A DNA stretch of 63,427 bases, the filler included, from Octopus bimaculoides (lineage: Eukaryota): NCBI RefSeq assembly GCF_001194135.2. It is 6 parts of 5 records of this genome, joined end to end, with 100 filler letters (N's around TTAATTAATTAA, not from the genome) between each part and the next. Parts side by side here need not be neighbours in the genome. Positions count along the whole stretch, not along the records: positions 8,941 to 21,976 come from NC_068985.1; 5 more parts are not named here. One strand, given 5' to 3'. Positions 17,816 to 20,343 of this stretch are shown one piece after another. Below the pieces are notes generated by a model, which saw only the letters and a list, made by a program, of their open reading frames with translations, had not been told where the DNA came from and made no database searches. The translations under genes were made by a program, and so were the position numbers. How positions within the stretch are numbered: the first letter of the stretch is position 1; each line of letters opens with the position of its first letter.

Positions 17816-18170
17816 CTTACAGAACCATCCATTGCTATTCGCCGGGGTGTCAGACAGGGGGACGCGCTCTCGCCGATCCTCTTCAACATAGCTATTGATC
17901 TGCTGCTAGATTCATTATCTACCAGCGGGGATTTGTGTGTGGAGGGGGTCCGGATGGATGGAATCACTTATGCAGACGACTTGGTCGTGGTGACGCGTGG
18001 GGGTCTCCAGGCGCTAGTTAATAGATGCTTGGGGTTCTTCCGCGATGTTGGGCTTGGGGTCGATGTCGGTAAGTGTGCGTGGTTCTCCATCCACGGCTTG
18101 AGCAAGACCTACCTAGTCAATGACAGCACCCCGCCGAATATTGACGGGTTCACTATTAAGTCAGTGGCCT
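17816..18170 (+). mobile_element. R2-type non-LTR RT fragment, motifs 4-7
   Basis: LTEPSIAIRRGVRQGDALSPILFNIAIDLLL..GITYADDLVVV..GLGVDVGKC..TYLVN..IDG. GC-rich relative to the flanks. Confidence 0.85.
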
Positions 18171-18323
18171 GCATTTCTGTGGCTAGTTGGTTGGTCGGAG
18201 AGCATTCTGGTCGGCTGGAGTGATGGTGGTCTGTCTGCTTGGTAGGGTTTAGCCTTGTGCCTCCCGTAAGTTTAACTTGATTGGTTTTGCCCATGTACTC
18301 ATGGTAATTGCTGTCCTATAATT

Positions 18324-20343
18324 ATGCTTACAAATAAGACAGAAAACATACGGCAGCCAGGCGCCGTAAATCTGGTGGACTGTGGGTCCGGGACGGGGCC
18401 TGCAGGTCAGGCTGAGCATGATACCCAAACATGCTTGGCCGTAGAGTTACCTTCCCCTGTTGTGGACAATGGACCATCTCCGCAGCAAGGTATGATCAGT
18501 GGTCCAACTGGTATCAACTGGAACGGCGACGGGAGTGTTAATAAGCTCCCGTCGCTGATATACAAAAGAAAGAGAGAGGGACTGTTTAGGTTAGTCTACC
18601 CTACTCATACGCTAGTAGTGAAGGGATCTCAGCTTCCTGAAGATCTTGCTCAGGACCCCCTCCATGACGTCCACTCTCTTACTTTAGAAGTGGACCGAGA
18701 GGCGGAAAGTGGGATATGACATCCCACTCTTGCAGGAAGCGAATTTTCGCTTCCCATCCCATGCGGATCGTGCTCTATAGCCTGTCTGCTATGTCCTCAG
18801 CGTTTCGCTTCTCCCCGTCGTTGGGGAGAACATTTAGAAGGTAGACATGGAATAAAGCCTGTCTGCAAATGCAGTAAGTGTGACAGGGAAAGCGGACATC
18901 TACATTTGATGAGGTGTCACGCCGGTAAGTGCAATGCTCTTTTTCGTGCCCCAAGTCCTGCTAGGCTCCCGTTTAAGTGTGACCACTGCAGCCGTTCTTT
19001 TTTGACGGCTGTAGGCCGTTCCCAGCACGAGCGCCATGAGCATCCTGTGGCTGAAAATGTGTGCAGGATGGCTGCTCACAAGGCTGAGCTGGCGAAAAAG
19101 CGTGTGGATCGGGCAGCCGCTGCCGAGTCAATAGGCCGAAGACGCAGAGGCTGTTGGTTGGATGAGGAAGTAGCGGTCCTCGTCAAGAAGGAGGCTGAGC
19201 TGATGGGGGCTGGTGTAAGNNNNNNNNNNNNNNNNNNNNNNNNNNNNNNNNNNNNNNNNNNNNNNNNNNNNNNNNGTGCAAACAAGTAGGGTCTAAAAGA
19301 GCAGACCTGGCCAAAAGGGCTCGCAGGAGTCATCAAGGGTCAGGTCTGCTTGATAATAGCTCCCTGTCACAAAGAGAGGAGGAATCCTCACCCCTCGTGG
19401 AGTGGAGAGATCGCTTCCTCGATGCTGCCAGTCCTGGGCATACCTGCTGGTCTGCAGTCTTCTGCGAGGCCCTATTGGAATTCGTGGAGGACGGGACAGT
19501 GGCTGCCTGGGATAATTTTGTTCGTAAAGTTGAGGACTGGCTGGAGCATAACAGATCTCGCAGAGAGGATACTACTAGCATTAAGAGGCATAGAAGGGTA
19601 GAGAACAGTCCTAATTTTCGGAGGCGAGGCAAGCGAAAAAGCTTTGCCATCGCGCAAAATTTATTCAAGACTAAGAAGAAGAGGCTCCTTGCAAGGATAT
19701 TAGAGGAGGATATTAGATCAGGGCTGCCCAATTCCTATATATTCTACAGAGGAATTTTATGGGCATAGATTTTCGACACCAGGCCCTGAGGTGGATCTTT
19801 CTGACCATCGTTCCTCCTCCATAGTTGATAGTGATCCTATTTTGAAACCATTCTCGATGGAGGAGATAAAGGTTAGTCGTAGGAAGATGGATGCCACCTC
19901 AGCGGCGGGCCCTGATGGTCTCACTGTTAGTGATATTAAAGCAGTGGACCCATCCATCCTAGCTAATATCTGTAATTGTATGTTGCTGGCCGGGAAGGTA
20001 CCTGATATCCTGAAGCGAGGTAGATCCGTCCTCGTATCAAAGAGGGCGGAAGATCCTTATGATCTCACCAACTGGCGACCACTAACGATATGTTCCGCGG
20101 TATATCGACTTTTTTCGAAAATGGTCGCCAAACGCATGCTTCAGCTAACTCCCCTTAACCCGATTCAAAGAGGGTTCATCCAGGCTGACGGCTGCAGTGA
20201 GAACTCGTTTCTCCTTCGACAGCTCGTCGGTCGCGCGATGGGGAGACCAGCATGACTGAGAATACCGCGTCTAGAAGTGGCCTTCATGGATCTCGCCAAG
20301 GCCTTCGACACAGTATCGCACTCTTTGATGTATGCGGGCCTTG
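18324..20343 (+). mobile_element. R2-type retrotransposon 5' portion: CCHH-CCHC-CCHH zinc fingers, Myb, RT motifs -1 to 3 (decayed)
   Basis: In one frame with one stop (18717-19): CLLCPQRFASPRRWGEHLEGRH, CSKCDRESGHLHLMRCHAGKC, FKCDHCSRSFLTAVGRSQHERHEHP, Myb GCWLDEEVAVL. After the gap: RKSFAIAQNLFKTKKKRLLARILE, SAAGPDGL, NWRPLTICS, QRGF, and FMDLAKAFDTVSH past a stop at 20253-55. Confidence 0.88.

What the first reader, a model, noticed from the sequence alone, without database searches (positions are those of the whole stretch)
17816..20343. R2-type retrotransposon with three N-terminal zinc fingers + Myb inserted outside 28S rDNA
Seen: a CCHH-CCHC-CCHH-Myb array, the R2 '-1' motif and RT motifs 0-7, as a GC-rich island in AT-rich non-rDNA flanks. 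There is no 28S target sequence (TTAAGG/TAGCCAAATG) at either end. Known: three fingers plus Myb is the R2-A architecture, and R2 normally inserts at one 28S site, although a few lineages are reported to have lost or changed target specificity. Inference: this is either a cephalopod R2 lineage with relaxed or altered targeting, or a DNA-level escapee from rDNA. It is relevant to the diversity of R2 proteins used for programmable gene insertion.
Basis: partly seen in the sequence, partly recalled or inferred. Interest (0 to 1): 0.7.

Follow-up and report, generated by a model that had tools for sequence, protein, structure and literature searches.

The report
Dead, scrambled R2 fragment outside rDNA
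This is a broken and internally reordered 2.5-kb piece of an octopus-type R2 jumping gene lying in ordinary AT-rich DNA; it was most likely moved there by DNA rearrangement, so it is not evidence that R2 has learned to insert at a new target.

Summary
The GC-rich island at 17816-20343 is real R2 sequence. It has three N-terminal zinc fingers plus Myb, and its closest solved structures are the zebra-finch R2Tg entries. It belongs with octopod R2 elements.

It is not a collinear element. RT motifs 4-7 (17816-18159) lie upstream of the partial 5'UTR, start codon, zinc fingers, Myb and RT motifs -1 to 3 (18160-20343). The two outer ends are only about 83 nt apart in element coordinates. The copy lacks the thumb, the CCHC/endonuclease domain, the 3'UTR and the 5' end. 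It carries two in-frame stops and one frameshift.

The assembly gap is collinear with relatives and hides about 14 codons (about 42 nt).

The 13-kb piece contains no 28S sequence, no target-site duplication and no element terminus. The copy therefore cannot be a primary R2 insertion.

The nearest relative is an Octopus vulgaris family (73-77% amino-acid identity in the RT). It sits at the canonical 28S site in head-to-tail dimers with DNA-level rearrangements. The published octopod R2s are also canonical.

Best reading: a pseudogenised R2 piece displaced from rDNA, derived from a head-to-tail repeat or a circle. This is a known kind of event and of low interest.

The parts
17816..18159 (+). 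RT fragment with motifs 4-7 (RGVRQGDALSPILFN, YADD, GLGVDVGKCAWFSI, and on to ...IDGFTIK). It equals positions 3433-3781 of the O. vulgaris R2 unit. It lies upstream of the N-terminal domains, so it is out of order.
   Evidence: Pfam RVT_1 positions 114-194, E 8e-11. Collinear with R2Tg residues about 826-940. blastn 77% to L001 unit 3448-3781. 73% aa identity.
18160..18323 (+). Internal head-to-tail junction (18159|18160, with 0-3 nt of filler), followed by the last ~164 nt of the R2 5'UTR. The 5' terminus of the element is absent.
   Evidence: Local alignment to L001 unit ~1088-1260. No 5'-terminal motif of either octopod R2 family in the window. No HDV-like ribozyme hit in Rfam.
18324..18782 (+). 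Native start codon (ATG 18324) and the N-terminal extension of the R2 ORF, with the octopod-conserved 'HTLV(V/L)(K/R)GxQLP' motif. It is broken by an in-frame TGA at 18717-18719, where R2-1_OVu has Cys.
   Evidence: Alignment with R2-1_OVu, R2-1_OSi, R2-1_ORu, R2-1_ECi and the L001 family. ORF list.
18783..19043 (+). Three zinc fingers: ZF3 CCHH 18783-18848, ZF2 CCHC 18864-18932 and ZF1 CCHH 18978-19043.
   Evidence: Translation. Aligned finger by finger with R2Tg 9dou/9nl3, E 1.7e-13, and with octopod R2s.
19152..19321 (+). Myb domain, interrupted by the assembly gap at 19220-19275. About 14 codons are hidden and the two sides are collinear.
   Evidence: Relatives have exactly 16 residues between GV and KQV.
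19322..19727 (+). Spacer and RT motif -1 (frame 2). A frameshift at about 19715-19727 moves the reading to frame 0.
   Evidence: Three-frame translation. Alignment to L001 unit 2392-2718.
19728..20343 (+). RT motifs 0, 1, 2, 2a and 3 (AAGPDGLT ... NWRPLTICS ... AFMDLAKAFDTVSH). There is an in-frame TGA at 20253-20255, where the relative has Arg. Homology ends at ...SLMYAGL. It equals unit 2734-3349.
   Evidence: Pfam RVT_1 positions 6-85. R2Tg alignment. 76.6% aa identity over 205 codons to the L001 unit.

Best explanation
The island is a dead, non-autonomous, circularly permuted piece of an octopod A-lineage (three-finger plus Myb) R2 retrotransposon. It lies in AT-rich, microsatellite-rich DNA that is not rDNA.

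Shown:
- In the coordinates of a 5306-bp O. vulgaris R2 unit, it holds positions 3433-3781, then a sharp head-to-tail junction, then about 1088-3349.
- Everything needed for movement is missing: the 5' end, thumb, CCHC, endonuclease and 3'UTR.
- The frame carries three disabling lesions.

Inferred:
- It did not arrive by R2's own target-primed reverse transcription. It is a segment displaced from rDNA-resident R2 copies at the DNA level.
- The internal junction joins RT motif 7 to the 5'UTR, and the two outer ends lie about 83 nt apart in element coordinates. The immediate donor was therefore a head-to-tail arrangement of a roughly 2.7-kb R2 sub-fragment.
- I think the most likely donor is an extrachromosomal circle, or a short tandem repeat, generated in or near the rDNA/R2 arrays. 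It was opened between RT motifs 3 and 4 and end-joined into this site with a small loss.
- It has no function now. It decays neutrally.
For: - R2 identity and architecture.
- Permuted order and the missing parts.
- No rDNA, no R2 termini and no ribozyme.
- No target-site duplication or terminal inverted repeats at the borders.
- The nearest relative (L001, O. vulgaris) is at the canonical 28S site. It forms head-to-tail R2 dimers and carries DNA-level truncations and rearrangements of R2 next to 18S/28S fragments.
- Every relative examined has the normal motif order, with about 100-117 nt between the motif-3 and motif-4 blocks.
- Published octopod R2s are canonical.
- dN/dS is 0.22 (dS 0.95) against the O. 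vulgaris family, and only 3 lesions are present. The source was therefore an active R2 lineage and the copy is not very old.
- Precedent exists. Incomplete extra-rDNA R2 copies occur in several Drosophila species, and an intact 3' junction is the accepted criterion for true retrotransposition as opposed to displacement by recombination (PMC2718515).
- My own estimate: two independent breakpoints falling within 83 nt of each other on a 5.3-kb unit has a chance of about 3%. This favours a circular or tandem donor.
Against: - I could not survey other copies of this family in the same genome. The collections reached only O. vulgaris relatives and a few Logan contigs of other families. A dispersed family is therefore not formally excluded.
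- No circle or tandem array was observed for this family. The circular-donor step is inference from geometry alone.
- A 2.7-kb internal deletion, or a circle formed within a single copy, has to be assumed.
- The sequence comes from a gapped assembly that I could not check against reads.
Confidence: 0.75

Rival explanations
1. Assembly artefact. The genome holds either a tandem array of an R2 sub-fragment that the short-read assembler collapsed to a single permuted unit, or a chimeric contig that joins R2 reads to unrelated AT-rich DNA.
For: - The piece comes from a scaffold with an N gap inside the element.
- R2 is multicopy and occurs in tandem in O. vulgaris.
- A collapsed array would give exactly a suffix-then-prefix picture.
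Against: - All three critical junctions (17816, 18159/18160 and 20343) lie inside gap-free contig sequence.
- No shared repeat at these junctions could have misled an assembler.
- The only gap is collinear with relatives.
- A collapsed array would still be a displaced head-to-tail R2 repeat outside rDNA, so the biological reading would hardly change.
Confidence: 0.15
2. True retrotransposition by an R2 lineage with relaxed or altered target specificity. The insertion was later scrambled by deletion and duplication.
For: - Non-specific R2 families exist: R2NS-1_SMed and R2NS-1_CSi (PMC5035012).
- The copy lies outside rDNA.
- The source lineage was under purifying selection.
- It is a family distinct from the published octopod R2-1 elements, at 41-42% N-terminal identity.
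Against: - There is no 3' end, no 5' end and no target-site duplication. Both borders are inside the RT and the order is permuted. None of this is produced by TPRT.
- The closest family found and all published octopod R2s use the canonical 28S site.
- Several extra ad hoc rearrangements would be needed.
Confidence: 0.05
3. The AT-rich 'flanks' are the intruder. A large (>10.5 kb) segment inserted between RT motifs 3 and 4 of an R2 fragment, deleting 83 nt. The composite was then duplicated in tandem, so the window shows the end of one composite unit and the start of the next.
For: - This would explain why the two outer ends are adjacent in element coordinates.
- Higher-order 10.5-kb repeats that include R2 exist in O. 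vulgaris.
Against: - No R2 sequence appears in the 8.9 kb to the left or the 1.6 kb to the right.
- The two flanks share nothing beyond microsatellites.
- It still requires the RT-motif-7 to 5'UTR junction as a repeat boundary.
Confidence: 0.05

Closest known systems
Second R2 family of Octopus vulgaris, on chromosome OX597831.1 (locus L001). The unit is 5306 bp. It is annotated only as 'hypothetical protein' or 'transcriptase' (P0001, P0009).
   Same: - Same domain series: N-terminal extension, ZF3-ZF2-ZF1, Myb, spacer and RT.
- 72-77% nt identity. Amino-acid identity is 76.6% (RT motifs 0-3), 73% (RT motifs 4-7) and 70% (ZF1-Myb).
- dN/dS is 0.22.
   Different: - The O. vulgaris copies are collinear and carry the thumb, CCHC, endonuclease and 3'UTR.
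- They sit at the canonical 28S site and form head-to-tail dimers.
- The window copy is permuted and truncated, and it lies in non-rDNA.
Published octopod A-lineage R2 elements: R2-1_OVu, R2-1_OSi, R2-1_ORu and R2-1_ECi (Genome Biol 2026, PMC13188248, Table S2)
   Same: - Same three-finger plus Myb architecture.
- Same conserved start region and the 'HTLVLRGxQLP' N-terminal motif.
- Same 16-residue Myb segment that bridges the gap.
   Different: - Only 41-42% identity over the N-terminal ~350 residues, so this is a different family.
- All of them have 28S flanks at the canonical site.
Extra-rDNA R2 copies of Drosophila (Stage & Eickbush 2009, PMC2718515)
   Same: R2 sequence outside the rDNA that is 'frequently incomplete', slightly diverged and unable to seed the active population. 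It is interpreted as displaced rather than retrotransposed when no intact 3' junction is present.
   Different: A head-to-tail permuted single unit is not described there. The tandem array reported for D. simulans is an R1/R2 fusion.
Non-site-specific R2 families R2NS-1_SMed and R2NS-1_CSi (Kojima et al. 2016, PMC5035012)
   Same: R2-clade sequence found in non-rDNA flanks.
   Different: Those families are defined by many copies >98% identical to their consensus, with element termini in different flanks. Here there is one copy without either terminus.
Solved R2 proteins: R2Tg (9dou, 9nl3), a second R2 retrotransposon protein (9nl2) and R2Bm (8gh6, 8ibw)
   Same: - The best-scoring chains are 9nl3 and 9dou (R2Tg). 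RT E 1.6e-49 / 2.2e-49, ZF-Myb E 3e-13 / 1.7e-13.
- The alignment is collinear once the two halves are put back in order.
   Different: The window copy lacks everything C-terminal of RT motif 7 and is interrupted by stops.

Membership tests
R2 non-LTR retrotransposon, A lineage (three zinc fingers plus Myb) | N-terminal ZF3 (CCHH) - ZF2 (CCHC) - ZF1 (CCHH) followed by a Myb domain | tested here: met
   Fingers at 18783-18848, 18864-18932 and 18978-19043. Myb from about 19152. Aligned with R2Tg and four published octopod R2s.
R2 non-LTR retrotransposon, A lineage (three zinc fingers plus Myb) | R2-type reverse transcriptase with motifs -1 and 0-7, closer to R2 than to other non-LTR RTs | tested here: met
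   R2Tg E 1.6e-49 and R2Bm 9.5e-41, against LINE-1 ORF2 at about 1e-7. Pfam RVT_1 matches in two pieces. The motifs are present but split and in permuted order.
R2 non-LTR retrotransposon, A lineage (three zinc fingers plus Myb) | C-terminal thumb/linker, CCHC motif and restriction-like endonuclease | tested here: not met
   tblastx of the full O. vulgaris unit finds nothing beyond unit position 3790 anywhere in 8941-21976. These domains are present in the O. vulgaris relative. This copy is therefore a fragment of a member, not a complete member.
R2 non-LTR retrotransposon, A lineage (three zinc fingers plus Myb) | Insertion at the 28S site ...TTAAGG|TAGCCAAATG... | tested here: not met
   No LSU rRNA hit at E<=1. 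Neither target half is present at <=3 mismatches. The feature is met by the nearest relative and by the published octopod R2s.
R2 non-LTR retrotransposon, A lineage (three zinc fingers plus Myb) | Element termini: a 5' end with a self-cleaving ribozyme region, and a 3'UTR that binds the protein | tested here: not met
   No Rfam ribozyme or R2 element hit. 5'-terminal motifs of both octopod families are absent. Unit positions 1-1087 and 3782-5306 are not represented.
Non-site-specific R2 (R2NS type) | An intact 3' end abutting non-rDNA sequence | tested here: not met
   The right border, 20343, lies inside RT motif 3. There is no 3'UTR.
Non-site-specific R2 (R2NS type) | Many near-identical copies in unrelated flanks in the same genome | not testable with these tools
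   The host genome is not in any searchable collection. Exact-ORF look-ups found nothing. Homologue searches returned only O. vulgaris proteins.
Circle- or tandem-derived permuted copy | An internal head-to-tail junction, plus outer ends that are adjacent in unit coordinates | tested here: met
   Unit 3781 is joined to about 1088 at 18159/18160. The outer ends are at unit 3433 and 3349, 83 nt apart.
Circle- or tandem-derived permuted copy | Direct evidence of the circular or tandem donor (outward-facing junction reads, Circle-seq, read depth) | not testable with these tools
   No reads are available. Back-splice signals (GT/AG) are absent at the junction by inspection of the alignment, which argues against a circular-RNA donor.

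The most novel reading that the evidence does not exclude
The permuted copy is the footprint of a circular R2 intermediate. An extrachromosomal DNA circle would have been excised from rDNA-resident (possibly tandem) R2 copies, opened between RT motifs 3 and 4, and re-integrated by end joining into ordinary chromosomal DNA. That would be a DNA-circle route by which a strictly rDNA-specific retrotransposon seeds sequence outside the rDNA, and I found no description of such a route for R2. The still more novel reading is that this family is an active R2 lineage with relaxed targeting. That is not formally excluded, but I put it at about 5%.
Probability: 0.3. Interest if true: 0.4.

Novelty: new member of a known kind. 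Interest (0 to 1): 0.2.

Why it matters
It matters little.

It removes a false lead. This locus should not be counted as an R2 lineage with new target specificity, and it offers no usable protein for R2-based gene insertion.

Two modest positives remain:
- It shows that the host carries, or recently carried, an A-lineage R2 family distinct from the published octopod R2-1 elements. An intact copy of that family, presumably in the rDNA, may be worth retrieving.
- The head-to-tail geometry is a clean example of how rDNA-bound elements can leak fragments into the rest of the genome. It could be followed up cheaply with long reads.

Tried and rejected
- Rfam scan of the whole piece at E<=1. It gave only sub-threshold microRNA-family hits on (TA)n/(CA)n microsatellites, which I rejected as low-complexity artefacts. 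There was no rRNA, no HDV-like ribozyme and no R2 element.
- Search for the 28S target halves and for the 5'-terminal motifs of both octopod R2 families. Nothing exceeded chance.
- Search for a target-site duplication at 17816/20343 and for direct or inverted flank repeats. Only microsatellites and a 9-mer turned up, so I rejected them.
- Back-splicing (circular RNA) as the source of the 18159/18160 junction. There is no GT after the upstream block and no AG before the downstream block in the relative (alignment), so this is not supported.
- Exact-protein look-ups of two window ORFs, intended to find the same locus in another assembly. Neither is on record.
- Two word-indexed homologue searches. 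They returned only two O. vulgaris gene models from one locus.
- The exhaustive representative search. The best hits were short, unnamed Logan fragments at 58-63% identity. The named ones were R2-like proteins of a flatworm, a turtle and an annelid. This shows that the RT has many relatives but not which clade it belongs to.
- Logan contigs L002-L005. These are other R2 families at about 65-74% identity with normal motior order. They give no information on the window's own family.
- I did not build a full RT tree with named R2-A/B/C/D, R8/R9 and NeSL/R4/HERO references. The published table holds only the first ~400 residues of each protein, and no reference RT sequences could be fetched.
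Full report
**What is in the sequence**

The piece 8941-21976 is AT-rich (GC 0.25-0.40) and full of (TA)n/(CA)n microsatellites. It contains one GC-rich island (GC 0.46-0.54) at about 17700-20440.

Three-frame translation of the + strand shows real R2-type domains:
- Zinc fingers: CCHH at 18783-18848, CCHC at 18864-18932 and CCHH at 18978-19043.
- A Myb domain from about 19152.
- A spacer ending in the '-1' motif (FAIAQNLFKTKKKRLLARIL).
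- RT motifs 0-3 up to 20343.

RT motifs 4-7 (RGVRQGDALSPILFN, YADD, GKCAWFSI) are not downstream of motif 3. They lie at 17816-18159, upstream of the fingers.

Pfam states this independently. RVT_1 profile positions 114-194 match 17816-18223, and positions 6-85 match 19745-20343.

**The gap**

- The left edge of the N run reads ...ELMGAGV(R/S). The right edge reads (x)CKQVGSKRADLAKR.
- The O. vulgaris relatives and the four published octopod R2 proteins all have exactly 16 residues between 'GV/GC' and 'KQ(V/I)' (KQINAAIARFLPGKTA or similar).
- R2Tg also aligns straight across the gap.
- The window shows parts of the first, fifteenth and sixteenth of these residues. About 42 nt are therefore hidden, a length that keeps the frame.
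- The apparent shift from frame 0 to frame 2 follows only from the estimated 56-N length.
- I take the two sides as continuous.

**Identity**

- When the two RT pieces are put back in natural order, they align collinearly with solved R2 proteins. R2Tg (9nl3/9dou) scores E 1.6e-49. A second R2 retrotransposon protein (9nl2) scores 4.8e-45. R2Bm scores 9.5e-41. LINE-1 ORF2 reaches only about 1e-7.
- The finger-Myb region matches R2Tg finger by finger, E 1.7e-13.
- The best database proteins are two Octopus vulgaris gene models (P0001, E 4.5e-206; P0009) from one chromosomal locus, L001.
- Table S2 of a 2026 survey (PMC13188248) lists R2-1_OVu, R2-1_OSi, R2-1_ORu and R2-1_ECi. All have the same N-terminal architecture and 28S flanks.
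- The window's N-terminal ~350 residues are 41-42% identical to these four and 56% identical to the L001 family. They share the start-codon region (ATG 18324) and an 'HTLVLRGxQLP' motif.
- The element therefore belongs to the octopod three-finger R2 group, in a family distinct from the published ones.
- An exhaustive search with RT motifs 0-2 found thousands of relatives but none closer than about 60%.

**Geometry**

I mapped the island on one 5306-bp O. vulgaris unit (L001 26265-31570):

| Window | Unit |
|---|---|
| 17831-18159 (17816-18159 at protein level) | 3448-3781 (3433-3781) |
| 18160-18482 | ~1088-1416 |
| 18671-19205 | 1655-2205 |
| 19280-20341 | 2266-3347 |

- The RT-motif-7 block therefore joins the 5'UTR head-to-tail at 18159/18160, with at most 3 nt of filler.
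- The two outer ends are only about 83 nt apart in unit coordinates (3349 and 3433).
- Missing are unit 1-1087 (the 5' end), 3350-3432, and 3782-5306 (thumb, CCHC, restriction-like endonuclease, 3'UTR).
- tblastx with the whole unit finds no further R2 piece anywhere in the 13 kb.
- All relatives examined have the normal order, with about 100-117 nt between the motif-3 and motif-4 blocks.

**Context**

- No rRNA, ribozyme or R2 RNA element is detected at E<=1.
- Neither half of the 28S target is present.
- Neither octopod 5'-terminal motif is present.
- The borders have no target-site duplication, poly(A) or inverted repeats.
- Because both borders lie inside the RT and no 3' end exists, this copy has no TPRT junction. 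It cannot be scored as an R2 insertion event. An intact 3' junction is the criterion used in Drosophila to separate true retrotransposition from displaced segments (PMC2718515).

**What the relatives do**

- In L001 the related family has canonical junctions. The 5' junction is ...GGGAGTAACTTCGACTCTCTT|GTGGGGCCTG..., and the 3' junction is ...GAGAAATTACA|TAGCCAAATGCCTCGTCATC followed by 1.5 kb of 28S.
- The units stand in head-to-tail dimers inside a 10.5-kb higher-order repeat. An inverted copy, truncated copies and stray 18S/28S fragments are also present.
- This shows that octopod R2 copies are shuffled at the DNA level in and around rDNA-derived regions.
- It also shows that the closest known family has not changed its target.

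**State of the copy**

- Against the O. vulgaris unit, 550 aligned codons give dS 0.95, dN 0.21 and dN/dS 0.22. For RT motifs 0-3 alone, dN/dS is 0.15.
- Almost all of the divergence therefore accumulated in active elements.
- The window copy has only three disabling lesions: TGA 18717 replacing a Cys codon, TGA 20253 replacing an Arg codon, and one frameshift near 19720.
- It is therefore a fairly recent casualty of a lineage that was functional. This last step is inference.

**Mechanism**

Shown: the copy is a permuted, truncated, terminus-less fragment in non-rDNA.

Inferred:
- It was displaced at the DNA level.
- A head-to-tail internal junction, with outer ends 83 nt apart, is what one expects when a circle or a tandem repeat of a roughly 2.7-kb R2 sub-fragment is cut once and joined into a new site.
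- Two independent breaks would land that close with a chance of only about 3% on a 5.3-kb unit (my estimate).
- I favour an extrachromosomal DNA circle or short tandem array arising in the rDNA/R2 arrays.
- A circular-RNA donor is unlikely because the junction lacks splice signals.

Rivals:
- A collapsed or chimeric assembly (0.15).
- Genuine retargeted retrotransposition followed by scrambling (0.05).
- A large insertion into an R2 fragment followed by tandem duplication (0.05).

**Comparison and novelty**

- Incomplete R2 copies outside the rDNA are known in Drosophila.
- True non-specific R2 families are known in flatworms. They are defined by many near-identical copies with termini. That definition is not met here.
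- Octopod R2s are published.
- What is new is a further octopod R2 family, seen only as a fragment, and a tidy permuted geometry.
- I rate this as a new member of a known kind, with interest 0.2.

**Limits**

- The host genome could not be searched, so copy number, other insertion sites and read support are unknown.
- No full RT tree with named reference clades could be built.
- The decisive checks are long-read support across the four junctions, read depth, and a genome-wide census of 3' junctions for this family.

Noticed in passing
L001 26180-26300 and 38990-39110 (O. vulgaris OX597831.1): Head-to-tail R2 dimers. At their junction a short 28S tail plus the R2 5' start (CTCTCTT+GTGGGGCCTGTTTC) is reiterated two to three times. 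This looks like template jumping, or re-insertion at the 5' junction of a resident copy.
   Followed up: partly
L001 20850-20962: A 3'-truncated R2 copy ends in the spacer/RT-start region (...GCTCCAGGCCCTGTGGTAGATTT). It runs straight into 28S sequence about 90 nt upstream of the R2 site (GATTTCTGCCC...), apparently through a GATTT microhomology. This is a DNA-level deletion junction inside an rDNA-derived region.
   Followed up: partly
L001 10001-36548 (gene model P0001, 811 aa): The annotated O. vulgaris 'hypothetical protein' is a 26.5-kb gene model stitched from repeated Myb-spacer segments of successive R2 copies. It is an annotation artefact, not a real protein.
   Followed up: partly
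L001 18783-19128, 31460-33078 and 7054-7255: The O. vulgaris locus holds only fragments of rRNA genes between R2 copies: the 18S 3' end and the last third of 28S. One R2 copy is inverted (6932-11162). It appears to be a degenerate, rearranged rDNA-derived region near one end of an 84-Mb chromosome, not a normal rDNA array.
   Followed up: partly
window 16344-16720, 17322-17407 and 20731-20797: (TA)n/(TG)n/(CA)n microsatellites give sub-threshold Rfam hits to mir-297, mir-466 and similar families (up to 65 bits against gathering scores of 85-90). These are low-complexity artefacts, not microRNA genes.
   Followed up: yes
window 9835-9878: A 44-nt A run (95% A) on the + strand, possibly the tail of a retroposed element that ends here.
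   Followed up: no
window 14703-14768: A 66-nt stretch is 82% identical to L001 6713-6778 on the opposite strand. It is probably a dispersed repeat shared with O. vulgaris, which fits an octopod origin for the window.
   Followed up: no
L002-L005 (Logan assemblies of SRR11869384, SRR11869390 and SRR11869391): Short contigs carry further R2 families about 65-74% identical to the window's RT, with normal motif order. The source organism was not identified.
   Followed up: partly
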